Shown: positions 311 through 63,866 of the stretch, piece by piece | Position numbering within the stretch: position 1 is the first letter of the stretch | How the letters are laid out: every line of letters begins with the position of its first letter | IMG/VR virus record: IMGVR_UViG_3300017917_001342 | Location: 248,001 to 312,000 of that record | Reading direction: 5' to 3' (one strand) | Length of the DNA stretch: 64,000 bases | Program-made: the position numbers and the translations under genes | Notes under the pieces: model-generated | Told to the model about the DNA's origin: nothing | Seen by the model: only the letters and a program-made list of their open reading frames with translations | Databases searched by the model: none

Positions 311-3232
311 ATGGTATACCAACTTATAACAGGACCAACTGGCTATACTGGCCCAACAGGTGTACCCGGTACTGCTGCAAACACTGGAGCACAAGGTGAT
401 CCTGGTCCAACTGGCCCAACTGGTTTACGAGGTATAACTGGACCTACAGGTCCGTTAGGTGGTCCAACTGGTCCGCAAGGCGGTCAAGGTGTTAAAGGCG
501 ATACTGGACCGACCGGCCCGGCAGGCAATGATGGTGTAACAGGTCCGCAAGGTGAACCGGGCACTGCTGCAAACACTGGACCTCAAGGCGATGCTGGACC
601 AACTGGTCCTACAGGGTTGCGTGGTACTACAGGTCCTACTGGACCGTTAGGTGGTCCAACTGGTCCACAAGGTACAAGAGGAGTTACAGGTCCTCAGGGA
701 TTAACTGGTGCAACTGGTGCAACTGGTAATATAGGTCCTACAGGGCCGTTAGGTGGTCCTACTGGTCCGCAAGGATTGCAGGGTGCAACTGGGCCTAGAG
801 GATTTCAAGGATATACTGGGCCTACTGGATTAGGATATACAGGTGCAACTGGCTCAACCGGACCTATAGGATTAACGGGTCCTATTGGTAACACAGGTCC
901 AACTGGTTATACAGGATTGCAAGGAACTACTGGCCCAACTGGCCCATTGGGCGGTCCTACAGGTCCAACTGGTACCATTGGTGATATAGGTCCAACCGGC
1001 CCAACCGGTAATGCTGGTTATACAGGCCCTACTGGTAATATTGGCCCTACTGGTGCAGCAAGCACAGTAACAGGCCCTACTGGATATACAGGCGTTACTG
1101 GACCAGCTGGTGCTGATGGTATTACTGGTTCAACTGGCCCAACAGGTGCCGCAAGTACAGTAACAGGCCCAACTGGATATACAGGTGTTACAGGTCCAGC
1201 TGGTGCAGATAGTGTAATTACTGGTCCAACTGGTGCAAATGGAAATAACGGAGCAACAGGTCCTACAGGTGCAAATGGCACTAACGGAGCAACTGGACCG
1301 ACTGGCGCAAACGGAATTAACGGATCAACTGGTCCTACAGGTGCAAATGGCACTAATGGAGCAACAGGCCCAACTGGTGCAAGCGGAGCAGATAGTACAG
1401 TAACAGGCCCTACTGGTGCTACAGGTGCAAATGGCACTAATGGAGCAACAGGCCCAACTGGTGCAAATGGCACTAATGGAGCAACAGGCCCAACTGGTGC
1501 AAGCGGAGCAGATAGTACAGTAACAGGCCCTACTGGTGCTACAGGTGCAAATGGAACTAATGGAGCAACGGGACCAACTGGTGCAGCAAGCACAGTAACA
1601 GGACCAACAGGCTATACAGGTGTTACAGGTCCAACAGGTACTAACAACCCATTTAACCAATCTCTTAATACAAGTGATGCAGTTGAATTTGCAAATTTAA
1701 TTGTTACAGGCAATGCACTTGTATTAACTAATCTTAATGTAAACGGCAATATTACTCTAAGCGGTAATGTTACACAAATATCCGGTAACAGTGGTCAATT
1801 TTTTGGTGATGTAAATGGTATAGGTGCACTGTATGCAGGTATATCGGTTGGCTATAGCACTGTTGTAAATCCTGTAATACAAAGTTCAGCTAGTATCGCA
1901 AATTATGTACAAAACAATTTCCAAAACATTAACAGTAGCAATATTGCATCAGCAGATTTAGTTGTTACAGCGGATAATGGTACTGATACTACACATTATA
2001 TAGATCTAGGTATTGCCAGTAGTGGATGGGATGGTACACAAGAAAACAGTATATCAACCGCGCTTTATCCAGACGATGGTTATCTATATGTTCAAGGACA
2101 TCCGGCATTTCCCGGAGAAGGTGGCAACCTTGTAATTGGTACCAGTATAACTGGAACGTCGTTAAAAATCATTGTAGGTGGCTCTAATTCTACAGCAATA
2201 GTTGCGCATTTTAATGCTGCAAATACTGTTACTAATAGCACAACTACAGGTGCATTAGTTGTCAATGGCGGAGTCGGTGTATCTGGTAACATATATTCTA
2301 GTGGTAATGTTGTAGCTCAAACTGTTATTGCAGATAACGTAATAGTAAATGGCCAACGTATAATATCTAGTACCGGACCAACTGGACCGACAGGCGCAGC
2401 AAGTACAATTACAGGACCAACAGGTGCTACAGGCGCAAATGGCACTAACGGAGCAACAGGCTTTACTGGTGCTACAGGTGCAAATGGTATTGATGGAGCA
2501 ACTGGACCTAACGGTATCAACGGAGCAACTGGTCCTACAGGCGCAAATGGTACTAACGGAGCAACAGGCCCTACAGGTGCTACAGGTGCAAATGGCACTA
2601 ACGGAGCAACGGGACCTACTGGTGCTACAGGTGCAAATGGCATTAACGGAGCAACGGGACCCACAGGTGCTAGCGGCGCAGATAGTACAGTAACAGGCCC
2701 TACTGGTGCTACAGGTGCAAATGGTACTAACGGGGCAACAGGCCCTACAGGTGCTAGCGGCGCAGATAGTACAGTAACAGGTCCTACTGGTGCTACAGGT
2801 GCAAATGGAACTAACGGAGCAACTGGCCCTACTGGACCAACTGGTGCAAATGGTACTGACGGAGCAACAGGTGCTACTGGTGCAAGTGGCCCAACTGGTA
2901 CATTACAGCCAAGAGTGACTCAGCTAGCTGATGCTACATCTGTTACATTTAACATTGATACTACAGATTTAGCATATCAAATTAATACTCAGGCTGTAGG
3001 AACGCTAACTATTAATGCACCAACTGGTACACCTGCGGACGGCCAAAAAATTGTATTTAGACTTAAATCTACAAATATACAGACATTTTCATGGAATGGT
3101 ATATTTGCAGGATCTATAGATTTACCGTTACCTACTGCATCAAGCGGCGGTTCTTTAACAGATTACTTGGGATTTGAATACAATGCAATCAACACCAAAT
3201 GGGATATATTAGGTAAAAACTTCGGATTTTAA
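311..3232 (+). CDS. Collagen-like (G-X-Y, GPT/GAT-rich) tail/head fibre protein
   Basis: Two long G-X-Y tracts flanking a central beta-rich domain, plus a C-terminal globular domain. Confidence 0.85.
1340..1580 (+). repeat. 120-bp near-perfect tandem duplication in collagen gene
   Basis: Lines 1381 and 1501 are identical except one base; a related 84-bp-period unit occurs at 2671/2755. Confidence 0.85.
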
Positions 3233-36768: not shown

Positions 36769-38622
36769 TTACACTGGATCAGCTTTTACATCGATTGGGC
36801 CATCATCGGGCGGCGATGATTGCGACTTGTAAATTATTTCACCCATTTTCATTAGGCTGTCACCTAGTGATTGCAATGCGGACTGCATTTCTTCAACAGT
36901 GTCTTTAGACAATGCTTCGCGTGTAGTAACAAGCTTTTCTTCTATTTCACTTTTCAGTTCTGCAGGAAGTTTGTCTTCATGTTCCTTGAGTTGCTTTTCA
37001 GCCTGATGGATCTGTGCTTCGCCTTGGTTACGAGTTTCAATTACAGCACGCTTCTTTTTGTCAGCTTCGGCATTTTCCTCAGCTTCTTTAACCATGCGAT
37101 TAATATCGTCCTCGCTAAGGCCGCCGCTGCTTTGAATTGTAACTTTTTGTTCTTTACCAGTTGCTACATCTTTTGCGCTTACATTTACGATACCGTTTGC
37201 GTCAATGTCAAATGTAACTTCGATCTGCGGAACGCCTCTAGGTGCTGGTGGGATGCCTTCAAGATTAAATGTAGCTAGAAGTTTGTTATCACGAGCAAGT
37301 TCGCGTTCACCTTGGCAAACCACAATCTGTACACCCGGCTGATTGTCTTGTGCAGTACTAAAGACCTGACTCTTCTTAGTAGGAATAGTAGTGTTGCGTT
37401 CAATCAGTTTGGTAAACACGCCACCGAGTGTTTCAATGCCCAGGCTAAGAGGTGTAACGTCTAGCAGTAGAACGTCTTTAACGTCGCCTTGTAGAACGCC
37501 ACCTTGAATAGCAGCACCCATAGCAACTACTTCATCTGGGTTAACACCCTGACTTGGGTCACGCTTGAACAGTTCTTTGACTGTTTGCTGTACCTTAGGC
37601 ATACGTGTTTGACCACCGACAAGAATTACTTCTGTAATATCTTCTGGCTTTAGCTTAGCATCAGCAAGTGCTTTACGGCAAGGTTCTTTAGTGCGTTCAA
37701 CTAGTTTTTCAACTAGACTTTCTAGTTTAGCACGAGTGAGTTTTACAGTAAGGTGCTTAGGACCTTCTGCCCCTGCGGTAATATATGGCAAGTTGATTTC
37801 AGTCTGCGAACTGCTACTAAGTTCAATTTTGGCTTTTTCAGCAGCTTCTTTGAGACGCTGTAGAGCCATGCCATCTTTGCGAAGGTCAACACCCTGTTCT
37901 TTTTTGAATTCGTCTGCAAGATAATCAACGATCTGCAAGTCGAAATCTTCACCGCCTAGCTGTGTATCGCCGTTGGTACTGAGAACTTCAAATACACCGT
38001 CGCCTAGTTCTAGAATACTGATATCAAATGTACCACCACCGAGGTCATAGACTGCAATCTTGCCACTGCCCTTTTTGTCAAGACCGTATGCTAGTGCAGC
38101 AGCAGTCGGTTCGTTGATAATACGTAGTACTTCTAGTCCGGCAATTTTACCTGCGTCTTTAGTAGCCTGACGCTGTGCATCGTTAAAGTATGCAGGTACA
38201 GTAATAACAGCCTGTGTTACTGCGGTACCGAGATAGCGTTCAGCAGTTTCTTTCATCTTGACAAGAATCTTTGCAGATACTTCTGCAGGACTCATTGCTT
38301 TGCCGTCAACTGAAACATATGCGTCGCCATTTGGTGCAGCTACAATTTCGTAAGGCAATAGTTTGCTGTCTTTTTGAACAGATGAATCTGTAAAACTACG
38401 ACCAATTAGTCGCTTTACAGCATGTAGTGTATTTTTTGGGTTTGTAACGCTTTGACGTTTTGCAGCAGCACCGACTAGCTGTTCACCGTCTTTTGCAAAT
38501 GCAACAATACTAGGTGTGGTGCGAGCACCTTCTGAATTTTCAATTACTTTGGCAGTTCCGCCATCCATGATACTTACACAACTGTTTGTTGTACCAAGGT
38601 CAATACCAATTACTTTGCTCAT
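36769..38622 (-). CDS. dnaK: Hsp70 chaperone DnaK
   Basis: [36 protein letters not shown]. Confidence 0.97.
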
Positions 38623-38680
38623 TTTATCTCCTCATAAAGCAAGATATGCAACATCTGCCTAAGGCCAGACACTGCATGTC
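38620..38680 (-). promoter_or_regulatory. ROSE-like RNA thermometer in dnaK 5' UTR
   Basis: UCUUGCU-uuaug-AGGAGA SD hairpin with bulged G, preceded by a second hairpin. Confidence 0.6.
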
Positions 38681-38702
38681 TAATATATATATTTTTTCTT
38701 AA

Positions 38703-39233
38703 TTAGTCAAGAGTTTGCTCAAGATATTGTGCCAGTTGAAATATATTAAGCTTATCTTCATTTACTTCTACCCAACCGACAACACTTATGCCTGCTTCTT
38801 TAACTGTATCTCTGCTACCACTTACTAGATGATGCCACCAGTGCAAAGGCTTATTGTGTTTCAACAATTTATATGCGCAGGTATCTGGCAATAGTCCGGG
38901 GGTGTCTATCACGTCTAGCGTAACTTTCATACAGTTACTTACACGCTGTTGACGATTGATATAGTCTGTGCATTTTGCAGTTTTAACATCAAGCAGTTTA
39001 CAGGCGATTTTACAACTTTTGACTTCATAGCCTTTCCAAGCTTTTACTAAACAGCAGCGCCCGCACCCATCGCAGAGTTCGTCCCACTGCTGCGTTGTCA
39101 TTGATTCAAGTGGAATAGTTTCCCACCATTTATCAACTGTAGCTGCTAAGGTCGACTGGTCGCATTCTAACGATCGGTGTTGGTTCTGCTGGTGGTTCGC
39201 CTCTGTTGATGCCGTGTACATGTTCCATACCAT
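38703..39233 (-). CDS. YcgN/UPF0260 (CxxCxxCC) cysteine-cluster protein
   Basis: WDELCDGCGRCC, LPDTCAY, WHHLVSG; start uncertain. Confidence 0.8.
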   Translation of the reverse strand: MVWNMYTASTEANHQQNQHRSLECDQSTLAATVDKWWETIPLESMTTQQWDELCDGCGRCCLVKAWKGYEVKSCKIACKLLDVKTAKCTDYINRQQRVSNCMKVTLDVIDTPGLLPDTCAYKLLKHNKPLHWWHHLVSGSRDTVKEAGISVVGWVEVNEDKLNIFQLAQYLEQTLD

Positions 39234-39582
39234 ATATGACTTTGCCCCACACAGTATATTGTCTATCTAAGAAACGTGCATCACCAAAACAGATAAAAAA
39301 TTGATCGCTAGCACTGTTTGGATCAGGAGTTCTTGCCATACTGCAAATACCTTCTGTGTGTGGTACATCATTAAATTCTGCTACAAGTTGCGGCAATGTT
39401 TTTTGTGTCCAACCGCCCTGTGCCATAAAGCCTTCTATAACACGATGAAACACTGTACCATCATAAAGTCCTTGTTCAGCTTGTGACAAAATCTGTGCAA
39501 CGTGGTTTGGTGCTTTATCTGGATAGCATTCTATCAAAACTACACCGGCTGGCAAATGCATTTTTAAAACTGGATTACTCAA
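39133..39582 (-). CDS. Cyclophilin-type peptidyl-prolyl isomerase
   Basis: FHRVIEGFMAQGG, SMART, QFFI, LDRQYTVWG. Confidence 0.92.
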   Translation of the reverse strand: MSNPVLKMHLPAGVVLIECYPDKAPNHVAQILSQAEQGLYDGTVFHRVIEGFMAQGGWTQKTLPQLVAEFNDVPHTEGICSMARTPDPNSASDQFFICFGDARFLDRQYTVWGKVIYGMEHVHGINRGEPPAEPTPIVRMRPVDLSSYS

Positions 39583-39657
39583 CGTAATAGATCCTTATAA
39601 TATAATAATAAGATTATAACTCAAAAGTTTAACATTGCAAAAATGGTAAATAACTCC

Positions 39658-40548
39658 ATGTGTATAATAGCTGCAAAATATTTCGATGGTGTCGGCTGGG
39701 TCGGTGTAAAAAACCGAGATAGAAATTATATACCGGAGATCAGCTTTAAACGTCAAAAGAAAAATGGCGTTGAAATCATGTTATTTTGGGATGACATTAC
39801 ACAATATTGCGAAGGTATGAACTCCGGTGGTGTTTGCATATTATCTGCAAGCCTTATGGTGTTAGATGACGAAAAAGAAATAACCAAACGTTCTAAAACA
39901 CCTAGCAAAGATGGCATTAAGATTAAAAAAGCACTGCAATATCCCAATGTCAAAGCCGTTGCAATGAGTTTAATCAAAAGCAAGCTGACCGGTAACACCA
40001 TCATTTTTGACAAAGACACCTGTTATCTGTTAGAAGGTGCGTGGCGCAGAGGCGGATATAGCGATAGAGATTATCGTTATAAAATACACGAAATACCTCG
40101 TGACAAGTTTGTTGCTAGAACCAATCACGGTGTATGGATAAAAGATGCAGGGTATCAACGCAATCCAGAGAATGATGCCGAAACACTCAGTCGTGTAAGC
40201 AGCGAAAGTCGCAAGGCAATCGGAGATCATGTTACTAAACGTGCTAATACTCCGGAAGAATTGATAGACGGTTTAGCAGGCACATGGACCAATAATCCGC
40301 AGTTAAACGGTTTGCGAACTGCTAAAGGCAAAAAGCAAATGCGTACTACAAGTCAAATCATGCTTATACCTAGTGAAGATACAATGTTTGTCAGACCAGT
40401 TCAAAGTCATATGACTTTTAACTTCTGGGATCTAAATAAACCTGACAATGATCTATGGGTAGAAATACTAAGTAACAGAGTATTACATCAGCATAAAAAG
40501 GAAGGTGGCGAACCACCGTTCCCTAAAATGAATCATTCTACAAAATAA
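39658..40548 (+). CDS. Ntn-hydrolase (NRDE/C45-like)
   Basis: Start MCIIA (Cys2 nucleophile), KNRD, EGMN, RTNHG; TAAATA just upstream. Confidence 0.65.
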   Translation: MCIIAAKYFDGVGWVGVKNRDRNYIPEISFKRQKKNGVEIMLFWDDITQYCEGMNSGGVCILSASLMVLDDEKEITKRSKTPSKDGIKIKKALQYPNVKAVAMSLIKSKLTGNTIIFDKDTCYLLEGAWRRGGYSDRDYRYKIHEIPRDKFVARTNHGVWIKDAGYQRNPENDAETLSRVSSESRKAIGDHVTKRANTPEELIDGLAGTWTNNPQLNGLRTAKGKKQMRTTSQIMLIPSEDTMFVRPVQSHMTFNFWDLNKPDNDLWVEILSNRVLHQHKKEGGEPPFPKMNHSTK

Positions 40549-41247
40549 ATGATATCAAATAAAAAAGTTCTACTATTTGGTGATAGCTTTGCAGATAAAA
40601 ATTCAGTCGGCGAATATGTGGGCTGGCCTGGTTTGCTAGAAAGCTATTATAAAGTTACAAATTTTGCAGTTTCTGGATCTAGTCCGGATCATCAATTAAA
40701 ATTGATGTTGGATTTTATAGAAAACACTGACAGTCACAGCTTCAAAGACACTGTGGTAATATTTTTAATATCCAGTCCAAATAGATTTGTTTTCAACTTT
40801 TATAAGAATCCGTCTGATCATCATTTATCAATTCATCTAGCTTATTACGAATCTGCAGACCTGTCATATCACGATGAATTGTCGCCGTATTTAAAATACA
40901 AAAAATTTGTAGAAGATTTTTACAAATATTATGCACTTAATGACGAATTTCAACTTACTCATGTGTTGAAAATATTAGGTATGCTGAATTTGTATTCAAC
41001 TCTGTTTGATAAAGTATTAGTTTGGCCTATATTTGAAAATTTGCCGTACAAATTACCAACGATGTCTGACAAAATGACATTTGTCAGTACACCGTTATTC
41101 AATATAGAGGGTAACCCTTACTGTAATGATGATAAACGACCAAACCATTTAATTAAAGAAAACCATCATATTATGGTATCGCAATTAATAGAATGGATAG
41201 AAACTAATCGATCAATTGATCTTGATCAGTTCAAATGGACCAAATAA
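40549..41247 (+). CDS. SGNH/GDSL-like protein
   Basis: FGDSF, N.AVSGSS, C-terminal NH. Confidence 0.55.
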   Translation: MISNKKVLLFGDSFADKNSVGEYVGWPGLLESYYKVTNFAVSGSSPDHQLKLMLDFIENTDSHSFKDTVVIFLISSPNRFVFNFYKNPSDHHLSIHLAYYESADLSYHDELSPYLKYKKFVEDFYKYYALNDEFQLTHVLKILGMLNLYSTLFDKVLVWPIFENLPYKLPTMSDKMTFVSTPLFNIEGNPYCNDDKRPNHLIKENHHIMVSQLIEWIETNRSIDLDQFKWTK

Positions 41248-41265
41248 AGTCTTAAAACTTTGGAT

Positions 41266-41577
41266 TTATTCTACAGGTGTAATATCTGCCTGCAACGGAA
41301 ATCCACTTTGTCTAGCAATTGTAACGGTTTCGTCACGTTTCTGAGATGCAACTTCGTGACTGTAAGTACCTGCAATACCTTTGTCATTGTTATGAATGTG
41401 CATCATAATATCCTGCGCTTCTTCAAAGGTCTTATGAAAAATTTGCATAAGAACAAGCACAACAAATTCCATACTGGTTTGATCATCATTGTATAACCAA
41501 ACATTCCACATTCTAGGTGGGGTAAGTGTAACTTTATCTACTACAGTGACAACAGTGCCTGTTTTAGTATTAGCCAA
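41266..41577 (-). CDS. clpS: Clp protease adaptor ClpS
   Basis: NDDQTSMEFVV, MMHIH, GFPL; TTG start with AGGAG SD. Confidence 0.9.
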   Translation of the reverse strand: MANTKTGTVVTVVDKVTLTPPRMWNVWLYNDDQTSMEFVVLVLMQIFHKTFEEAQDIMMHIHNNDKGIAGTYSHEVASQKRDETVTIARQSGFPLQADITPVE

Positions 41578-41603
41578 AATAATCTCCTAAGTTCTTTGTA
41601 AGT

Positions 41604-41635
41604 ATGCGGTTGACCGCTAGTGCAGTCAACCGCAT
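41604..41635. terminator. Hairpin after hsp20
   Basis: atgcggttgac..gtcaaccgcat. Confidence 0.5.
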
Positions 41636-41642
41636 GTTAAAT

Positions 41643-42119
41643 TTAGTTGTTGTCTGTACTTACTTTGACATCGACGATATTACCGTTTGTAATAGGAATA
41701 CTACGACCCTTAGCTGGTTCGGGTATTTCTCGCAGTAATTCAATTACCAGTAGACCGTCTTCAAGTTTAGCAGATACGACTTTAATATGTTCTGCTAGTG
41801 TGAATTGTCGCTCAAAATCGCGTGCTGCAATACCACGATGCAGCCAATTGCGTTCTGGTTGGTCTGTGTTTTTACTGCCTTTGACGCTTAGTATGCGATC
41901 ATTTGTAATATCGATACTGAGTTCGTCTAACTTAAACCCGGCCACTGCTAGCTCAAGACGATATGTGTCACCGTCACAGTCTAGGTTGTAAGGTGGGTAA
42001 CCGTTTGCTTGTGTAACATTGATGTTGTTGATACGTGTAAGCATAGGCTCAAAACCTATAGCAAAACGATTTAGATCTCTAAAAAGATCATCGATCATGA
42101 GAGATGGTAATTGACGCAT
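41643..42119 (-). CDS. Small heat-shock protein Hsp20/IbpA
   Basis: YPPYN, LAVAGF, HRGIAARDFERQFTLAE, DGLL. Confidence 0.93.
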   Translation of the reverse strand: MRQLPSLMIDDLFRDLNRFAIGFEPMLTRINNINVTQANGYPPYNLDCDGDTYRLELAVAGFKLDELSIDITNDRILSVKGSKNTDQPERNWLHRGIAARDFERQFTLAEHIKVVSAKLEDGLLVIELLREIPEPAKGRSIPITNGNIVDVKVSTDNN

Positions 42120-42176
42120 TTATACCTCCTAATATAGCGAAGCACTACCTTAAGTGGGCCTCGAAAGCGCCCACAC
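42117..42176 (-). promoter_or_regulatory. ROSE-like RNA thermometer in hsp20 5' UTR
   Basis: CUUCGCU-auauu-AGGAGG; upstream GUGGGC/GCCCAC hairpin; promoter TTGACT-17-TAAATA at 42181-42209. Confidence 0.65.
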
Positions 42177-42212
42177 TATATATTTAATAACGTGTGAGCG
42201 CAAAGTCAAGAG

Positions 42213-43466
42213 TTAGTTGGCAGCTTCTGCGGTTTTATTGTATATTTTCAATGGGTCGCTGCGTTCGTTAACAACATCTTCTGTAACGACAATCCTACGA
42301 ATACCTTCGCCGGCCATAGACGGTAGTTCAAATTGCGAACGTAGTAGAATCTTTTCTAAAATACTACGCAGCCCTCTTGCACCAGTTTTACGTTCCATAG
42401 ACTGCTTTGCAATTGCACGGAGCGCATCAGTTTGAAATTCAAGGTCAATTCCTTCAATTTTAAACATTTTTTGGTACTGTTTAACAATTGCGTTCTTTGG
42501 TTCGGTGAGAATGTTAACTAGATCGTCTTCTTTGAGATCACAGAATGGTACCATAACTGGAATACGACCAATAAGTTCTGGGATAAGTCCGAACTTAATA
42601 AGATCTTCCTGCCTAGTTTGTGAGATCAATTCAAACGTATCTTTGTCACTGAGTGACTCACCCGGCAACGATGCACCAAAGCCAATGCCAGCACCCTTGT
42701 CTAGTCGCTTGCTGATGATATCAGTTAGCCCAACAAATGCACCACCTAGGATGAACAAGATATTCTTTGTGTTGATTAGAATATATTCACCATGTGGATT
42801 TTTACGACCGCCGGTTGGTGGTACTTTGACTTCGCAGCCTTCGATCATTTTAAGCAGTGCTTGCTGAACACCTTCACCGCTTACATCGCGTGTAATACTA
42901 GTGTTTTCGCTTTTACGGCCTTTTTTGTCAATTTCGTCAATGTACACAATACCACGTTCTGTACGCTCAACGTCTTGATCAGCAGCTTGATATAGTCGTG
43001 CAATAGCTTCTTCAACATCAAGTCCAACATATCCGCTTTCTGTAAGACTGGTAGCATCAATGATAACCATTGGAACATCAAGCAGTTTTGCAGCTTGTTG
43101 AATGATGTAGGTTTTACCAACACCAGTTGGTCCGATGAACATTAGGTTGGTTTTATCAATCTCAACATCGTCAATCACTGGATTGTTGATGCGCTTCATG
43201 TGAGAATAGATTGCAACACTCAGCATCATCTTAGCTTGGTGCTGGCCAACCATTCGTTCGTCGAGATACGCCATAATTTTATCGGGTGTAAGTACACCAA
43301 AATCTTTTGGCTGTTTGACGAATTCTTCTTTAAGAACCCCGTAACATAGTTCTACACATTCGTTACAAATGTATACATCGTTACCACTGATCAGCTTATT
43401 GACCTCTGTTTGATTCTTACCGCAGAAACTGCAAGAATATGTAGGACGTGAACTATCCCTGGCCAT
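42213..43466 (-). CDS. clpX: ATP-dependent Clp protease ATPase ClpX
   Basis: CSFC..CNEC zinc-binding domain, [30 protein letters not shown]. Confidence 0.95.
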
Positions 43467-47868: not shown

Positions 47869-49161
47869 TTACCAAATAGTTTCGCCGTTTCTTTTTACAA
47901 CAGCAGTGTAGGTTCCGTCAGTATTCCTAGACACATATAAGCGTTGTTTGATAAAACCGATTACATCGCCAACACTGTATTGATTTGATCTGTCTTGTAC
48001 GTCTTTTAGACTTTGTTTGTACACTTCTTCTATATTGTGTATGTCTAAAACACTGCCATCTTCTTCATTGGCTTCTTTAGCATATTCTCTAACTTCGTCC
48101 GGAGTTAGATCTATAGCATCTTCTATTGTGTCAAATATACCACGTGCTTCGTCGTTGTAAGATAGATAACTGGGTGCATCATCTGTTATTTCATCGTCGT
48201 CGTTGACATAGCCTTCGCTACGCAACCACTCGTAATAGTAGTCGTCATTGGTTTCCCAATCGCTTAGCATTTCGTATACATAATCCATCAACAGTTCTTT
48301 TATTTTTTTAGTCAATGGTACTAGTATTTCGTCGGGAGCAAATTCCAACATGCGATCGAAGTATTCTGGGTGTCGTTCTTTAAAAAAGTCAAACAGTTCA
48401 GGAAAACGTGTTCTAAGCAGCCAGGTCAATCCCACTGCATCGTCGTCTTCATTCATAAACTGTTCACTTGGAAAGTGTAGTTGATACTTTTCACCATCAT
48501 GTTCAGGGTTCTTAGGTATCAATATGTACAGCGGTCCTTGACGGTTATAACGTTCAAAGTAATTGGTACCATGAGTAGCAGCAGTACACCAGCGAGTACC
48601 TCGGCCATATCTACATGCTGCTGGTTCATCTAGTGGATGTACAATTGCAACTTCTGAGCTATCGTAGATTTTTTCTGCTCGACCCTTGTCGGCATCATCT
48701 TCAACGTCTTCGTATTCGTCCATTCTATCTAGAAATTCGTCAAATGTCTTGTAGCGATTAATGTCATTGAATGGTGCAGCTATACGCTTTTTGCGATTGA
48801 GTTTGTCAAACTTGGCAAGATATGTTGCAACAGTACTGACCATATCTTCTATCTGCGTGATTCTTGTATTTTGTGGTGATGCAAATAGTCTAGCCATCCA
48901 CTGAGTATACTTTTTATTTGGCGACGGATCAGCAGCTTCAAACTGTTCCATAGCTCGTTCTGCAAAATCATTGAGGCTGTCAGGATCTGATGCTGCATCG
49001 TGATATAATGGGCTATTTTTAAGTTTATCGGCTAATTGGTTCAAAGGTGTCGAATATAAACCAACTGCATCACGTAGTGCAGCTAATCCTAAATTTGGAC
49101 CTATCGCAGCAATAGCACGAGCGCGATCATATTCTAGTAATAGTAAAGTTTGTATTTTCAT
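47869..49161 (-). CDS. Jumbo-phage hypothetical protein, possibly internal to the virion
   Basis: MKIQTLLLLE N-terminus; DPSPNKKY, CRYGRGTRWCT, KYQLH; acidic C-terminal half. Confidence 0.7.
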   Translation of the reverse strand: MKIQTLLLLEYDRARAIAAIGPNLGLAALRDAVGLYSTPLNQLADKLKNSPLYHDAASDPDSLNDFAERAMEQFEAADPSPNKKYTQWMARLFASPQNTRITQIEDMVSTVATYLAKFDKLNRKKRIAAPFNDINRYKTFDEFLDRMDEYEDVEDDADKGRAEKIYDSSEVAIVHPLDEPAACRYGRGTRWCTAATHGTNYFERYNRQGPLYILIPKNPEHDGEKYQLHFPSEQFMNEDDDAVGLTWLLRTRFPELFDFFKERHPEYFDRMLEFAPDEILVPLTKKIKELLMDYVYEMLSDWETNDDYYYEWLRSEGYVNDDDEITDDAPSYLSYNDEARGIFDTIEDAIDLTPDEVREYAKEANEEDGSVLDIHNIEEVYKQSLKDVQDRSNQYSVGDVIGFIKQRLYVSRNTDGTYTAVVKRNGETIW

Positions 49162-50264
49162 CGTTCGAGCTCATCTGCTACTATTAGGTTGCCTTTTCTG
49201 ACAAATTTTCTCAAACCATCTGCTTGTATAAGTTCGTGAGTGCGTTCGTCAGTTGGATAGACTTTACATACTTCTAATTCATTTTCCCAGGTGTACTCTG
49301 GATTGGGATCGCCTGCTTGCCAATCGTCAAATCCCTGTTTACCATCGGCTAACGCAGTCTCAGGAGTCTGGCCGGTACCCCAAGCATAATCTTCACTGGG
49401 ATTGCCAAAGAAATACCACTCGGCTTTGGTTTGTGGTATTGGGCCAGCTTTTTCTTTTGGACGATTCATAGTAGTTTGATCGTAATAGACTTTACCGTTT
49501 GATCTATTTTCGATTCGTATAATACGAGTTTTACCTTTGAATCCTATGTTGCGTGTAACTCTAACTGTGTCAGATTCAATAGGTTTAACTGTGGCAAGTA
49601 CATTGTACATTGCGGTTTCGAACGCAGGGGTATGTCTAATGTCATTTAATATGCGAAAACTTACATAATTTCTAAATTTACTAGACGATTGCTTCTTATT
49701 GACAATATGTCGTAAAAATACAGTTGCGAGTACTCTTATTTCAAGTAGCGCATTGCGATTCAATTTGATTTTTGTAGGTCTGGCATTGTATTGGCGCAGG
49801 TTTATTTTAGTTGGATTTAAAAATGCCTGTTCAACATGCGTTAATGCGTTTTGAAAATTTTGTTTGTTTGAATAGTATGCCGAAGCGTCTTCTACAGATT
49901 CAATTGCTGCGGGTGTTGAATCTAATATAGACTCAGTTAATATTGCCATAATATCATCTTCGTCTATAGTACCTGAACTTATCACATACTGTAGAGTTAT
50001 TAAAACAGGATCACCGCCATGTGCAGTAGATGCGTTGTCTGCACCTTCTTCTGCTTTGTCTAAGTCAGAAGTTAGATACACACCGCCTTTAAATGTATCA
50101 TATCCACCAGTATCTACATTAGTCTCTCTACTGTATGTGGATTTTGGTGGATTAGCTAATAATCCGTGCTTTAGTATACTAGGTACTAGTGCGCTGCTAG
50201 TACCATGATACATGGTTTGAACACGTTGTATTTTTCGTTCGGTGAGGATGTCGTTGATTTGCAT
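49158..50264 (-). CDS. ADP-ribosyltransferase-like protein with capsid-targeting-like N-terminus
   Basis: Start MQINDILTE just after TATAAATA; MYHGTS, ILKHGL, GVYLTSD. Confidence 0.6.
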   Translation of the reverse strand: MQINDILTERKIQRVQTMYHGTSSALVPSILKHGLLANPPKSTYSRETNVDTGGYDTFKGGVYLTSDLDKAEEGADNASTAHGGDPVLITLQYVISSGTIDEDDIMAILTESILDSTPAAIESVEDASAYYSNKQNFQNALTHVEQAFLNPTKINLRQYNARPTKIKLNRNALLEIRVLATVFLRHIVNKKQSSSKFRNYVSFRILNDIRHTPAFETAMYNVLATVKPIESDTVRVTRNIGFKGKTRIIRIENRSNGKVYYDQTTMNRPKEKAGPIPQTKAEWYFFGNPSEDYAWGTGQTPETALADGKQGFDDWQAGDPNPEYTWENELEVCKVYPTDERTHELIQADGLRKFVRKGNLIVADELER

Positions 50265-50268
50265 CCAA

Positions 50269-50276
50269 TATTTATA
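50269..50276 (-). promoter_or_regulatory. T4-type late promoter
   Basis: Exact TATAAATA. Confidence 0.65.
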
Positions 50277-50523
50277 AGCAAGATAGCTTGAATAACAGTT
50301 GTTCTTCTTGACTGGCAAACCCTATGTATGCATGATTTGCATCAAACCACCACGCCCAGGGTCCTTGGCAGTTTACATCACACCATTCTATTAATTCATG
50401 TTCTATAGTTGGTATTCTGTTGTCGAAGAGCGATGTATGTTTGTAAACATACGGTACATCATTAGGCGGGAGATTATCCCGCCTAAATTTGCTTTCAACT
50501 GACTTACGCAGGGAAGAAGTCAT
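50272..50523 (-). CDS. Paralogue-family small protein
   Basis: EWCDVNCQGPW...FASQEEQLLFKL. Confidence 0.65.
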   Translation of the reverse strand: MTSSLRKSVESKFRRDNLPPNDVPYVYKHTSLFDNRIPTIEHELIEWCDVNCQGPWAWWFDANHAYIGFASQEEQLLFKLSCL

Positions 50524-52235: not shown

Positions 52236-52312
52236 TGGTAGGGGATGCAGGACTCGAACCAGCAACCTACGGATTATGAGTCCGGCGCTCTAACCAATTG
52301 AGCTAATCCCCC
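52236..52312 (-). tRNA. tRNA-Ile2 (anticodon CAT, lysidine type)
   Basis: GGGGGATTAGCTCAATTGGTTAGAGC..CTCATAA..TTCGAGT..ACCA cloverleaf; adjacent to tilS. Confidence 0.85.
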
Positions 52313-63384: not shown

Positions 63385-63718
63385 AAAACGGCAGTTTGAT
63401 TCTGTTTCCAAGTCCAAACTGCCAAAAACTCATTTACGCTGCGAGAGCGTAAGAAGGTGCAACGTTATCGTTTGCAACTGTTGATTTTCTTGCGTTAACC
63501 GAGCTTGCGCCGGGCAACTCCACTCACATAGTCCGCCTGTCGATCCTATTTCGAGCCCATCAAGAATACACACCGTGATCTAAGGCCGGAATTCCCGCCC
63601 CTTGACGTATCGAAGTCGCTGTCCAGTTTCCCGAACTATTTCGATACATGTGTACTCTTGGTGGACCCGCTGGGTACCGCCCCCAGGTCCAGAACGTGTT
63701 CCGTTTGCTTCAACGTTA
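63385..63718 (-). ncRNA. ssrA: Two-piece (circularly permuted) tmRNA
   Basis: Acceptor piece ending GGACCTGGGGGCGGTACCCAGCGGGTCCACCA (63659); coding piece starting GGGCTCGAAATAGGATCGAC (63558); G3.U70 pair; tag ANDNVAPSYALAA* at 63434-63475; terminal hairpin 63390-63423. Confidence 0.9.
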
Positions 63719-63723
63719 CAGTG

Positions 63724-63754
63724 TATTTATAGCTTCACTTTTTTGGTTTGTCAA
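63724..63754 (-). promoter_or_regulatory. tmRNA promoter (sigma70 with overlapping late motif)
   Basis: TTGACA-17-TATAAATA. Confidence 0.7.
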
Positions 63755-63866
63755 CTGGTGTTTTTTCTAACTTCTTGTCTTGCTTAGTCTGTTCTTCTAA
63801 ACATTCTGGACAAAATTCTGAACCGTATTCTGCACAATCTTTACAATGGTCTTTTTCTTTTTTCAT
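63735..63866 (-). CDS. 43-aa CxxC..CxxC peptide (not in ORF track)
   Basis: MKKEKDHCKDCAEYGSEFCPECL; ATGA overlap. Confidence 0.5.
   Translation of the reverse strand: MKKEKDHCKDCAEYGSEFCPECLEEQTKQDKKLEKTPVDKPKK

What the first reader, a model, noticed from the sequence alone, without database searches (positions are those of the whole stretch)
38620..38680. ROSE-like thermometer on a phage dnaK
Seen: UCUUGCU pairs with the SD AGGAGA leaving a bulged G, with a 12-bp hairpin upstream. Known: ROSE elements (U-U/C-GCU anti-SD) mostly control small heat-shock genes in alpha/gamma-proteobacteria, while dnaK is normally regulated by sigma32 or HrcA. Inference: the phage uses RNA thermosensing for its chaperones.
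Basis: partly seen in the sequence, partly recalled or inferred. Interest (0 to 1): 0.65.

Follow-up and report, generated by a model that had tools for sequence, protein, structure and literature searches.

The report
ROSE-like leader on phage dnaK
The leader of this giant phage's dnaK gene is a real, conserved copy of the short "ROSE-like" RNA element that hides the ribosome-binding site of bacterial small heat-shock genes, and the same element also sits on the phage's own hsp20 and on hsp20, dnaK and groES genes of many marine T4-like phages.

Summary
The 5' leader of dnaK (36769..38622) holds a 12-bp hairpin with a bulged G (38677..38646). UCUUGCU (38644..38638) follows and can pair with AGGAGA (38632..38627), leaving G38640 bulged.

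The core motif alone is not significant in the window (1 hit, 0.43 expected). Comparison makes it real:
- dnaK orthologues at 63-78% protein identity keep an invariant AUCUUGCUU just before the SD, behind a hairpin of different sequence.
- A collection scan found the same architecture almost only before Hsp20, DnaK and GroES genes.
- 70 of 77 phage hsp20 loci found by protein similarity carry U(U/C)GCU before AGGAG.
- Hairpin I covaries strongly. The outer pair of hairpin II covaries (U-A, C-G, A-U).
- A second copy precedes the phage's own hsp20 (42174..42124).
- Rfam ROSE_3, the Pseudomonas short ROSE model, aligns end to end to a relative (34.6 bits, threshold 43). Its consensus shows the same bulged-G hairpin I.

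The window's copies score below every Rfam ROSE threshold. My own model ranks them first and second in the window, but at E 0.46 and 1.5.

Thermosensing itself is inferred. Folding predicts the ROSE fold for the leader alone, but a competing pairing once coding bases are added. sHSP-mediated repression is a live alternative.

The parts
38682..38710 (-). Sigma70-like promoter match TTGACT-17-TATATT. It would place the transcript start at about 38677, the first base of hairpin I. The -35 lies in an AACTCTTGACT box that is also found upstream of hsp20.
   Evidence: Consensus scan, 10 of 12 matches. The scan as a whole is at noise level (25 found, 21.7 expected), so this is an inference. It is strengthened by the same arrangement in orthologues: L003 and L004 dnaK have TTGATT-17-TATATT/TATATA, and L001 hsp20 has TTGACA-17-TATAAT.
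38646..38677 (-). Hairpin I of the dnaK leader: 12 bp, a bulged G (38665), 2 bp and a UUA loop. It is the stable 5' hairpin of a short ROSE-like element.
   Evidence: Sequence. Present in every predicted fold at 4-45 C. The family-wide helix has double-sided changes in 8 of 8 pairs and 97% of cells paired.
38638..38645 (-). Anti-SD strand A-UCUU[G]CU containing the ROSE motif UUGCU. G38640 is the bulged G.
   Evidence: Sequence. AUCUUGCUU is invariant in dnaK orthologues L001-L004, L032 and L137. TCTTGCTT occurs 27 times in the 518-kb genome, and only this copy precedes an SD.
38633..38637 (-). Top of hairpin II: U38637.G38633 closing pair around the UAU loop.
   Evidence: MFE fold of the leader. 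In the family the first and last spacer bases are U and A in 60 of 66 sequences.
38626..38632 (-). Shine-Dalgarno AGGAGA (38632..38627) plus U38626, forming the 3' strand of hairpin II.
   Evidence: Sequence. Pairing probability with the anti-SD is 0.79 at 5 C, falling to 0.45 at 45 C, when the RNA ends at the AUG.
36769..38622 (-). dnaK (617 aa), the regulated gene. AUG is at 38622..38620. Codons 2-3 (AGCAA, 38619..38615) can compete for the UUGCU motif.
   Evidence: Pfam HSP70. NCBIfam DnaK equivalog above cut-off. The competing pairing is seen.
42154..42174 (-). Hairpin I of the second copy, in the hsp20 leader: GUGGGC[G]CU-UUCG-AGGCCCAC, again with a bulged G.
42124..42143 (-). Hairpin II of the hsp20 leader: GCUUC[G]CU (42143..42136), loop AUAUU, SD AGGAGGU (42130..42124).
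   Evidence: It is the MFE fold of the leader. TCGCT-N3-7-AGGAG occurs once in the window, here.
41643..42119 (-). hsp20 / IbpA-like small heat-shock protein (158 aa), 49% identical to E. coli IbpA, with a C-terminal I-P-I motif.
   Evidence: Pfam HSP20 E 4.8e-17. BLASTP against E. coli IbpA E 2e-36. Sequence.

Best explanation
The dnaK leader is a short, two-hairpin ROSE-like translational control element. It is a diverged relative of the Pseudomonas/SAR11 ibpA leaders (Rfam ROSE_3 type).

Inferred: transcription starts at the foot of hairpin I, from a sigma70-like promoter. Hairpin I is a stable 5' stem that stays folded.

Shown at sequence and fold level: directly 3' of hairpin I, AUCUU[G]CUU folds back on GAGGAGAU. 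This buries the Shine-Dalgarno sequence in a weak helix of 8 pairs that is interrupted by a bulged G and contains two G.U pairs.

Inferred by homology: at low temperature this helix limits 30S binding, and on warming it melts first, so DnaK translation rises.

Shown: the phage's IbpA-like hsp20, 3.5 kb upstream, has the same leader, so the two chaperone genes share one post-transcriptional control. Related phages put the same leader on hsp20, dnaK and groES.

Inferred: the element most likely entered phages together with a host ibpA gene. The sigma32 promoter was replaced by phage or sigma70-type promoters, and the leader was then copied onto other chaperone genes.
For: Anatomy. The MFE of the leader is exactly hairpin I plus hairpin II, with a bulged G in both.

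Orthologue conservation: AUCUUGCUU plus 3-5 nt plus (A)AGGAGA is invariant in L001-L004, L032 and L137, while the hairpin I sequence differs in each.

Gene specificity: of the 110 ORFs of at least 50 aa that follow the 120+ exact matches to ATCTTGCTT-N3-6-AGGAGA in IMG/VR, 91 are one Hsp20 family, 11 are DnaK and 1 is GroES.

Unbiased set: 70 of 77 phage hsp20 loci found by protein similarity have U(U/C)GCU 4-9 nt before AGGAG (50 UUGCU, 16 UCGCU).

Covariation: hairpin I has double changes in 8 of 8 pairs. Overall 97.1% of cells are paired against 78.7% in shuffles (0 of 500 shuffles reach the observed value). The outer pair of hairpin II reads U-A 56, C-G 8, A-U 2.

Second copy on hsp20 in the window. 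These two are the only exact U(U/C)GCU-SD-ATG sites in the 518-kb genome.

Link to validated thermometers: Rfam ROSE_3 aligns over 1-69 of 69 positions to L203 (34.6 bits, local E 4.6e-6). Its consensus hairpin I, GAU[G]CC..GGGUC, is the one seen in the phage family. E. coli ibpA has the same core geometry, UCGCU + 6 nt + AGGAG. The Pseudomonas short ROSE has two hairpins, an unpaired AUG, and a hairpin II that is sufficient on its own, with 4-6 fold induction from 25 to 42 C (PMC3669281).

Bacterial counterpart: Pelagibacteraceae and alphaproteobacterial ibpA carry CTTGAAA..CCCCATAT promoters and the same leader. R1 scores them at 43-67 bits.

An independent model, R1, built only from other phages' hsp20 leaders, ranks the dnaK leader first and the hsp20 leader second in the window. 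It hits dnaK orthologues L002-L004 at 26-36 bits.

No CIRCE and no sigma32-type promoter were found at dnaK.

Predicted melting: P(helix II) is 0.79 at 5 C, 0.55 at 37 C and 0.45 at 45 C for the leader alone.
Against: No Rfam ROSE model (ROSE, ROSE_2, ROSE_3) matches either window copy at E <= 10.

R1 scores are weak for the window copies: 11.6 bits (E 0.46) and 9.7 bits (E 1.5) in the window. Genome-wide, the dnaK leader ties with an unrelated terminator hairpin at E about 3.7.

When 10 or more coding bases are included, ViennaRNA gives the anti-SD:SD helix a probability below 0.02 at all temperatures. UUGCU then pairs with AGCAA (codons 2-3) and the SD sits in a loop. The validated E. coli ibpA control keeps its SD paired at 0.70-0.87 under the same treatment.

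Hairpin II lacks the flanking G-C clamps, of which the upper one was needed for temperature-dependent repression in Pseudomonas (PMC3669281).

Five of the seven helix II pairs show no double-sided change, because the SD is constrained anyway.

Confidence: 0.7

Rival explanations
1. The shared leader is mainly a binding site for the phage's IbpA-like small heat-shock protein. Free sHSP would bind the leaders of hsp20 and dnaK (and groES in other phages) and repress translation. When unfolded or aggregating proteins titrate the sHSP away, the whole chaperone set would be de-repressed. Temperature would then be sensed only indirectly. This rival can coexist with the thermometer.
For: In E. coli, IbpA binds the structured 5' UTRs of ibpA, ibpB and rpoH and represses their translation. 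That needs the UTR stem-loops and the IX(I/V) motif, and it is relieved by aggregates (PMC10410725). The window's Hsp20 is 49% identical to E. coli IbpA and keeps an I-P-I motif. An hsp20 gene lies within a few kb of the dnaK or groES copies in 9 of 17 loci. Both hairpins carry the same conserved Y-[G]-C / G-G module, which would suit a repeated recognition feature. It would also explain why such a thermodynamically weak helix II is kept.
Against: No binding or regulatory data exist for any phage sHSP. What E. coli IbpA recognises in the RNA is not defined at sequence level, and the E. coli dnaK and groES UTRs are not its targets. The conserved module is equally explained by the known thermolabile geometry of ROSE helices.
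Confidence: 0.3
2. The element is a constitutive leader. Hairpin I protects the 5' end of the mRNA, and the weak helix or the alternative pairing with codons 2-3 merely sets a fixed translation rate. The ROSE-like look would be an inherited relic of the captured ibpA leader, with no regulatory switch in the phage.
For: With coding bases included, folding predicts an open SD at every temperature for both window genes. Hairpin II has only A-U and G-U clamps. Phage infections in a thermally stable ocean may see little temperature change.
Against: A relic would not keep nine invariant bases and the bulged G across dnaK genes that have diverged to 63% protein identity while the rest of the leader changed. 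It would not have been copied onto dnaK and groES either. The UUGCU:AGCAA alternative is not conserved, because L002, L003 and L004 start with other codons.
Confidence: 0.12
3. Hairpin I plus the U-rich AUCUUGCUUU is an intrinsic terminator of the upstream ycgN-like gene (38703..39233), and the anti-SD complementarity is coincidental.
For: The terminator scan lists 38677..38646 with the tail ATCTTGCTTT. The hairpin begins 25 nt after the upstream stop codon.
Against: In the family the hairpin sits 2-8 nt downstream of a promoter (TATAAATA, or a sigma70-like -10). It is usually followed by 4-12 A-rich bases rather than a U tract. The same hairpin-plus-motif unit occurs with many different upstream genes and in bacterial ibpA genes behind sigma32 promoters. 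The tail bases are conserved as a specific word, not as a run of U.
Confidence: 0.05

Closest known systems
Short ROSE-like RNA thermometers of Pseudomonas ibpA (Rfam ROSE_3, RF02523; Krajewski et al. 2013, PMC3669281)
   Same: A leader of about 60 nt with two hairpins. Hairpin I is stable and carries the GAU[G]CC..GGGUC bulged-G module. Hairpin II pairs U(U/C)GCU with the SD around a bulged G and has a small loop. The AUG is unpaired. The element sits in front of an IbpA-type gene. ROSE_3 aligns end to end with a phage family member.
   Different: Scores are below the Rfam threshold: 34.6 and 26.8 bits against 43 for relatives, and no hit for the window copies. Hairpin II is clamped by A-U and G.U pairs rather than G-C pairs. 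In the dnaK clade hairpin I is longer (12-14 bp), abuts hairpin II, and has a G-C rather than a Y-G pair below the bulge. The promoter is phage-late or sigma70-like instead of sigma32. The regulated genes include dnaK and groES.
E. coli ibpA ROSE-like thermometer (Rfam ROSE_2; Waldminghaus et al. 2009) and its IbpA-mediated autorepression (Miwa et al. 2021; PMC10410725)
   Same: Same core geometry: UCGCU + 6 nt + AGGAG in E. coli against UUGCU + 5 nt + AGGAG here. The downstream protein family is the same for the window's hsp20 (49% identity).
   Different: E. coli has three hairpins and a leader of about 100 nt. Its core helix is stronger (predicted SD pairing 0.70-0.87). No ROSE_2 match lies at the window's leaders. 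In E. coli, dnaK and groES are not controlled through such a leader.
ibpA leaders of SAR11 (Pelagibacteraceae) and SAR86 genomes (found here: L253-L256, L281, L288, L312, L317)
   Same: Nearly the same leader as the phage hsp20 family: hairpin I ..AUGCC..GGGU.., then A(U/A)CUUGCU, 5-6 nt, AGGAG. R1 scores are 43-67 bits for the SAR11-type loci and 12-26 bits for the SAR86 and related gammaproteobacterial loci.
   Different: They sit behind sigma32-type promoters (CTTGAAA..CCCCATAT) and only in front of ibpA. SAR86 versions have two bulged-G hairpins before the SD helix.
hsp20 leaders of cultured pelagimyophages: Pelagibacter phage Mosig EXVC030M and Methylophilales phage Melnitz (Kyanoviridae)
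   Same: TATAAATA, hairpin I with bulged G, (A)UCUUGCUU or CUUUGCUU, AGGAG(A/G), ATG of hsp20. R1 scores 35 and 47 bits.
   Different: The element is on hsp20 only, with a late-type promoter, in 141-kb genomes. It is not annotated in the records, and the Melnitz paper does not mention heat shock.

Membership tests
ROSE-like RNA thermometers (definition of the Narberhaus laboratory, PMC3669281) | U(U/C)GCU motif 5' of the SD, imperfectly paired with it in the 3'-proximal hairpin | tested here: met
   UUGCU at 38642..38638 pairs with AGGA at 38632..38629 and lies within an 8-pair helix. This is the MFE fold of the leader. The hsp20 copy has UCGCU.
ROSE-like RNA thermometers (definition of the Narberhaus laboratory, PMC3669281) | Unpaired (bulged) G inside the anti-SD strand, opposite the SD | tested here: met
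   G38640 is bulged. In the R1-aligned family its two flanking pairs are kept in every sequence (col 95-112 C-G in 82 of 82; col 93-113 U.G 67 or C-G 13, 2 unpaired), and the G is invariant in alignments A3 and A4.
ROSE-like RNA thermometers (definition of the Narberhaus laboratory, PMC3669281) | One or more additional 5' hairpins in the same leader | tested here: met
   Hairpin I at 38677..38646. Across the family it has 8 of 8 pairs with compensatory changes.
ROSE-like RNA thermometers (definition of the Narberhaus laboratory, PMC3669281) | Located in the 5' UTR of a heat-shock gene, classically a small heat-shock gene of alpha- or gammaproteobacteria | tested here: inconclusive
   The gene is a heat-shock chaperone, but it is dnaK and it is phage-borne. 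The sister copy in the window is on an IbpA-like hsp20. Bacterial counterparts occur in SAR11 and SAR86.
ROSE-like RNA thermometers (definition of the Narberhaus laboratory, PMC3669281) | Temperature-dependent melting of the SD helix and temperature-dependent translation | not testable with these tools
   In silico only. P(helix II) falls from 0.79 at 5 C to 0.45 at 45 C for the leader alone. It is below 0.02 once 10 or more coding bases are included.
Rfam ROSE (RF00435), ROSE_2 (RF01832), ROSE_3 (RF02523) | Covariance-model score at or above the family's gathering threshold | tested here: not met
   No ROSE hit at E <= 10 on 38560..38780 or 42080..42220. No hit at these sites in whole-genome searches. 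Relatives reach 34.6 bits (L203) and 26.8 bits (L255) against a threshold of 43.
Phage/SAR11 short ROSE-like subfamily (defined here by model R1, built from 24 phage hsp20 leaders) | Significant match to R1 | tested here: inconclusive
   The window's dnaK leader scores 11.6 bits (E 0.46, rank 1) and the hsp20 leader 9.7 bits (E 1.5, rank 2). Genome-wide E is about 3.7. Orthologues L002, L003 and L004 score 32.5, 25.9 and 36.2 bits with E <= 2.4e-4.
Phage/SAR11 short ROSE-like subfamily (defined here by model R1, built from 24 phage hsp20 leaders) | Word A-U-C-U-U-G-C-U-U, 3-6 nt, AGGAG(A/G), 4-8 nt, AUG, directly behind a bulged-G hairpin | tested here: met
Intrinsic (Rho-independent) terminator | G+C-rich stem immediately followed by a U tract, at the end of a transcription unit | tested here: inconclusive
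   The scan lists the site (12 pairs, only 4 of them G-C, tail AUCUUGCUUU). In the family the hairpin follows a promoter and is mostly followed by A-rich spacers.
Classical dnaK transcriptional controls (CIRCE/HrcA; sigma32 promoter) | CIRCE inverted repeat, or CTTGAAA-N13-15-CCCCAT, upstream of the gene | tested here: not met
   No CIRCE within 3 mismatches in the window. Sigma32-like matches are at chance level and none lies upstream of dnaK or hsp20 on the minus strand.

The most novel reading that the evidence does not exclude
Large marine phages run a sigma32-independent, purely post-transcriptional chaperone regulon. One captured ibpA leader has been copied onto hsp20, dnaK and groES. 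All these mRNAs would then be repressed together by the weak ROSE helix and by the phage's own IbpA-like sHSP binding the shared bulged-G hairpins. They would be released together when heat, or the flood of unfolded virion proteins, titrates the sHSP away. In the dnaK genes that begin AUG-AGC-AAA, the anti-SD could additionally toggle between the SD (off) and codons 2-3 (on).
Probability: 0.2. Interest if true: 0.85.

Novelty: new variant of a known kind. Interest (0 to 1): 0.66.

Why it matters
ROSE-like thermometers are the commonest class of bacterial RNA thermometer. They are described for small heat-shock genes of alpha- and gammaproteobacteria.

The element is also carried by phages, including cultured pelagimyophages, a 518-kb phage and many uncultured T4-like phages. 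Within phages it has been moved onto dnaK and groES, genes that bacteria control through sigma32 or HrcA.

Three consequences follow:
- It extends the reach of this RNA class to viruses and to the main Hsp70/Hsp10 chaperones.
- It offers very short natural variants (hairpin II with only A-U and G.U clamps) that may be tuned to cool ocean temperatures. These would be useful for understanding and engineering thermometers.
- It gives a testable handle on how a virus without its own heat-shock sigma factor times or conditions chaperone synthesis, possibly through sHSP-mediated feedback.

The marine SAR11/phage subfamily falls below Rfam's ROSE thresholds, so it is currently invisible to routine annotation.

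Tried and rejected
- Folding with coding sequence included gave an MFE in which UUGCU pairs with AGCAA of codons 2-3 and the SD is open. I did not take this as disproof. The alternative is not conserved in orthologues, and the leader alone folds into the ROSE shape. It is kept as evidence against.
- Rfam searches at permissive thresholds on both window leaders gave no ROSE hit. A weak PyrG-leader match (E 2.1) and miRNA matches were dismissed as chance.
- TCTTGCTT is not a general promoter or UTR word of this phage. Of 27 copies, only the dnaK copy precedes an SD.
- MotA-box or T4 middle-promoter reading of TGCTTTA: rejected by inspection. The distance to any -10 is wrong, and the transcript would start inside the ORF.
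- groES and dnaJ of the same genome lack the element. The R1 hit at G000:361237-361277 is an ordinary terminator hairpin.
- The MAFFT/RNAalifold alignment of the six dnaK-clade leaders was too poorly aligned to show hairpin I, so single folds were used instead.
- The search for related loci with the Hsp20 alignment in genome contigs failed for lack of a conserved stretch. A single protein was used instead.
- Six literature searches found no description of ROSE-like elements in phages or on dnaK (one search was used to locate PMC3669281). Subscription journals are not covered, so absence is not proven.
Full report
WHAT IS THERE

The finding lies on the minus strand. dnaK is window 36769..38622 (-). 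It scores Pfam HSP70 E 2.6e-271 and the NCBIfam DnaK equivalog at 1019 bits against a cut-off of 648.

Reading the leader 5'->3':
- The stop codon of an upstream YcgN-like gene lies at 38705..38703.
- An A/T-rich stretch follows, with a sigma70-like match TTGACT-17-TATATT at 38710..38682.
- Hairpin I spans 38677..38646: 12 pairs, a bulged G at 38665, 2 more pairs and a UUA loop.
- Next come A38645 and UCUU[G]CU at 38644..38638.
- Then U, the loop UAU, and G.
- AGGAGA lies at 38632..38627, followed by UAAA and AUG at 38622.

It extends to 8 pairs: A-U, U-A, C-G, U-A, U.G, bulged G38640, C-G, U-A, U.G.

The sequence is viral. G000 is an IMG/VR record of 518,643 bp with direct terminal repeats and CheckV completeness of 100%. 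It carries T4-like rIIA, topoisomerase II, RNA ligase and tail-fibre genes.

IS IT MORE THAN CHANCE?

Not on its own. TTGCT-N3-7-AGGAG is expected 0.43 times per window, and 37 of 100 shuffles have at least one match. The bare 6-bp helix is worth about -0.2 kcal/mol at 37 C. The comparative evidence settles the question.

(i) dnaK orthologues. Those found by protein similarity in IMG/VR at 63-78% identity (L001-L004, L032) keep an invariant AUCUUGCUU. It sits 3-5 nt before (A)AGGAGA and behind a hairpin whose sequence differs in each locus.

(ii) Collection scan. Nearly all have the same layout: a TATAAATA-type late promoter, a hairpin with ..(A/G)(U/C)[G]CC-loop-GGG(U).., a few bases, the motif, the SD, and ATG. 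Of the 110 downstream ORFs of at least 50 aa, 91 form one family (Pfam HSP20), 11 are DnaK and one is GroES.

(iii) Unbiased set. In 80 phage hsp20 loci found by protein similarity, 70 of 77 readable upstream regions have U(U/C)GCU 4-9 nt before AGGAG. Of these, 50 are UUGCU and 16 are UCGCU, which is exactly the ROSE consensus.

(iv) Within the 518-kb genome. Only two genes have an exact U(U/C)GCU-SD-ATG arrangement: dnaK, and an IbpA-like hsp20 at window 41643..42119 (-). The hsp20 leader is hairpin I 42174..42154, GCUUC[G]CU 42143..42136, AUAUU, AGGAGGU 42130..42124.

STRUCTURE SUPPORT

RNAalifold on 78 leaders recovers hairpin I with an invariant bulged G. In its four lower pairs, 20-42 sequences carry compensatory double changes.

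I built a covariance model, R1, from 24 hsp20 leaders of other phages. On the 87 matches it aligned:
- 97.1% of cells are paired, against 78.7% in shuffles. The covariation score is 0.50 against 0.15, and 0 of 500 shuffles reach it. Sliding the partners destroys the signal.
- Hairpin I has double changes in 8 of 8 pairs.
- Hairpin II is constrained by the SD. Three of its pairs never vary and two vary on one side only (U.G/C-G).
- The outer pair of hairpin II covaries: U-A 56, C-G 8, A-U 2, U.G 2, with 14 unpaired.
- A separate count on the unbiased set gives U:A 41, C:G 9, A:U 2, with C found only opposite G.

Folded from hairpin I to the AUG, the following all give the same two-hairpin MFE with a bulged G in each hairpin: the window's dnaK leader, its hsp20 leader, orthologues L001, L003 and L004, and the leaders of the cultured phages Mosig and Melnitz.

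RELATION TO KNOWN ROSE ELEMENTS

Krajewski et al. (PMC3669281) define ROSE-like thermometers by the U(U/C)GCU motif imperfectly paired with the SD in the 3'-proximal hairpin. They describe short two-hairpin versions (61-62 nt) on Pseudomonas ibpA. In those, the AUG is unpaired, hairpin I is stable, hairpin II is sufficient on its own, and induction from 25 to 42 C is 4-6 fold.

Rfam's model of these, ROSE_3, aligns over all 69 positions to a phage hsp20 leader (L203, 34.6 bits, local E 4.6e-6, threshold 43). Its consensus hairpin I reads GAU[G]CCG..CGGGUC, the very module conserved in the phage family.

E. coli ibpA has the same core geometry: UCGCU, 6 nt, AGGAG.

The nearest bacterial relatives of the phage Hsp20 are in Pelagibacter/Pelagibacteraceae, other alphaproteobacteria and SAR86. 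L255 and L256 carry sigma32-type promoters (CTTGAAA..CCCCATAT) followed by the same leader. R1 scores them at 67 and 43 bits.

The cultured Kyanoviridae phages Mosig (host SAR11) and Melnitz (host OM43) carry the leader before their annotated hsp20. The element is not annotated in those records.

The most economical history is capture of a host ibpA gene with its leader, a promoter swap, and then spread of the leader to dnaK and groES inside phage genomes. In several loci, dnaK and the following hsp20 each have their own copy (L084, L131, L142, L147).

MEMBERSHIP CAVEATS

No Rfam ROSE model reaches threshold on the window's leaders, or even E <= 10. R1 ranks them first and second in the window, but only at 11.6 and 9.7 bits (E 0.46 and 1.5). 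Genome-wide the dnaK leader ties with a terminator hairpin.

The low scores have two causes. In this jumbo-phage clade hairpin I is longer, abuts hairpin II and has a G-C pair below the bulge. In the hsp20 copy the spacer differs. The orthologues L002-L004 bridge the gap, with R1 scores of 26-36 bits.

I therefore call the window's element a diverged variant of the ROSE_3-type family. I do not call it a member by Rfam's criterion.

HOW IT PROBABLY WORKS

Shown:
- The leader can fold into hairpin I plus an SD-occluding hairpin II.
- Both are conserved.
- The element is specific to chaperone genes.
- Neither CIRCE nor a sigma32-type promoter is present at dnaK or hsp20.

Inferred:
- Transcription starts at about 38677.
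- Hairpin II limits initiation in the cold and melts on warming.

Predicted behaviour is mixed. For the leader alone, P(helix II) falls smoothly from 0.79 at 5 C to 0.45 at 45 C. Typical phage hsp20 leaders show median SD pairing of 0.68 at 5 C and 0.45 at 45 C, similar to their bacterial counterparts.

With 10 or more coding bases included, the model prefers UUGCU:AGCAA (codons 2-3) and leaves the SD open. The E. coli ibpA control stays at 0.70-0.87 under the same treatment. That alternative is not conserved in the orthologues. It might be a kinetic irrelevance, or it might be a genuine 'on' conformer.

Hairpin II also lacks the G-C clamps, of which the upper one was needed for temperature-dependent repression in Pseudomonas. 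This could mean a lower melting point suited to sea water, or a dependence on a helper.

A SERIOUS COMPLEMENTARY MECHANISM

In E. coli, IbpA itself binds the structured leaders of ibpA, ibpB and rpoH and represses them. Aggregates titrate it away. This requires the leader stem-loops and the IX(I/V) motif (PMC10410725).

The window's Hsp20 is 49% identical to IbpA and keeps I-P-I. hsp20 lies near the dnaK or groES copies in 9 of 17 loci. Both hairpins share the same Y-[G]-C/G-G module.

A phage chaperone regulon repressed in trans by its own sHSP through a shared leader is not excluded. It is the most novel reading.

NOVELTY AND SCORE

The kind of element is known. Its presence in phages, its transfer onto dnaK and groES, the minimal A-U/G.U-clamped hairpin II and the promoter swaps are, as far as six full-text searches show, undescribed. 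This marine subfamily also lies below Rfam's thresholds.

I rate it a new variant of a known kind, with interest 0.66.

Noticed in passing
window 63390..63758 (-); tRNA at 52239..52312 (-): The phage encodes a permuted (two-piece) tmRNA of the alphaproteobacterial type. ARAGORN reads the tag peptide as ANDNVAPSYALAA. Rfam scores are tmRNA_permuted 101 bits and alpha_tmRNA 97 bits. A tRNA-Met is also present. The tmRNA type hints at an alphaproteobacterial host.
   Followed up: no
window 36769..43466 (-): A proteostasis gene cluster on one strand: ClpX (42213..43466), Hsp20 (41643..42119), ClpS (41266..41577), cyclophilin-type PPIase (39133..39582), a YcgN-like cysteine-cluster protein (38703..39233) and DnaK (36769..38622). 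Two unknown plus-strand ORFs (39643..41247) interrupt it.
   Followed up: partly
G000:C1:488850-489038 (-) and G000:C1:346908-347180 (-): The same genome also encodes a DnaJ-domain protein (293-aa frame) and a GroES (99 aa), but no GrpE. Neither gene has the ROSE-like leader. groES is preceded by a terminator-like hairpin and a plain SD.
   Followed up: yes
window 38705..38715 (-) and 42204..42214 (-): An identical 11-nt box, AACTCTTGACT, lies at the -35 position upstream of both the dnaK and the hsp20 leaders. Orthologous loci have canonical sigma70-like promoters there, for example L001 hsp20 with TTGACA-17-TATAAT. Most pelagimyophage copies instead use TATAAATA. This suggests different timing classes for the same leader.
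   Followed up: partly
L077:4207-4401, L141:10544-10765, L144:3364-3606: Three small ORFs (65-81 aa, no Pfam match) in other phages carry the same ROSE-like leader. They may be a further, unknown member of the phage heat-shock set.
   Followed up: no
L209:904-956; L223:1-97: A glutamine riboswitch (glnA RNA, 64.9 bits, above threshold) lies just downstream of a phage hsp20. A partial manA RNA match (29.5 bits, below threshold) lies upstream of another.
   Followed up: no
L281, L288, L312, L317 (SAR86 and other marine gammaproteobacteria), about 100 nt upstream of ibpA: These bacterial ibpA leaders have two consecutive bulged-G hairpins (..GAUGCC..GGGUC.. and ..CAUGCC..GG(G/A)UG..) before the UCGCU-SD helix. 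The bulged-G module is therefore repeated up to three times in one leader.
   Followed up: no
window 38615..38619 (-) and dnaK starts in L001, L084, L100, L131, L137-L139, L147, L148: Most leader-bearing phage dnaK genes begin AUG-AGC-AAA-GU. AGCAA is the exact complement of the UUGCU motif. Folding with coding bases predicts this competing pairing, which leaves the SD in a loop.
   Followed up: partly
window 311..3232 (+) and 49158..50318 (-): A 973-aa collagen-repeat tail-fibre protein (many PHROG tail-fibre families), and a 386-aa ORF with a weak PARP catalytic-domain match (E 7.6e-4, below the Pfam cut-off).
   Followed up: no
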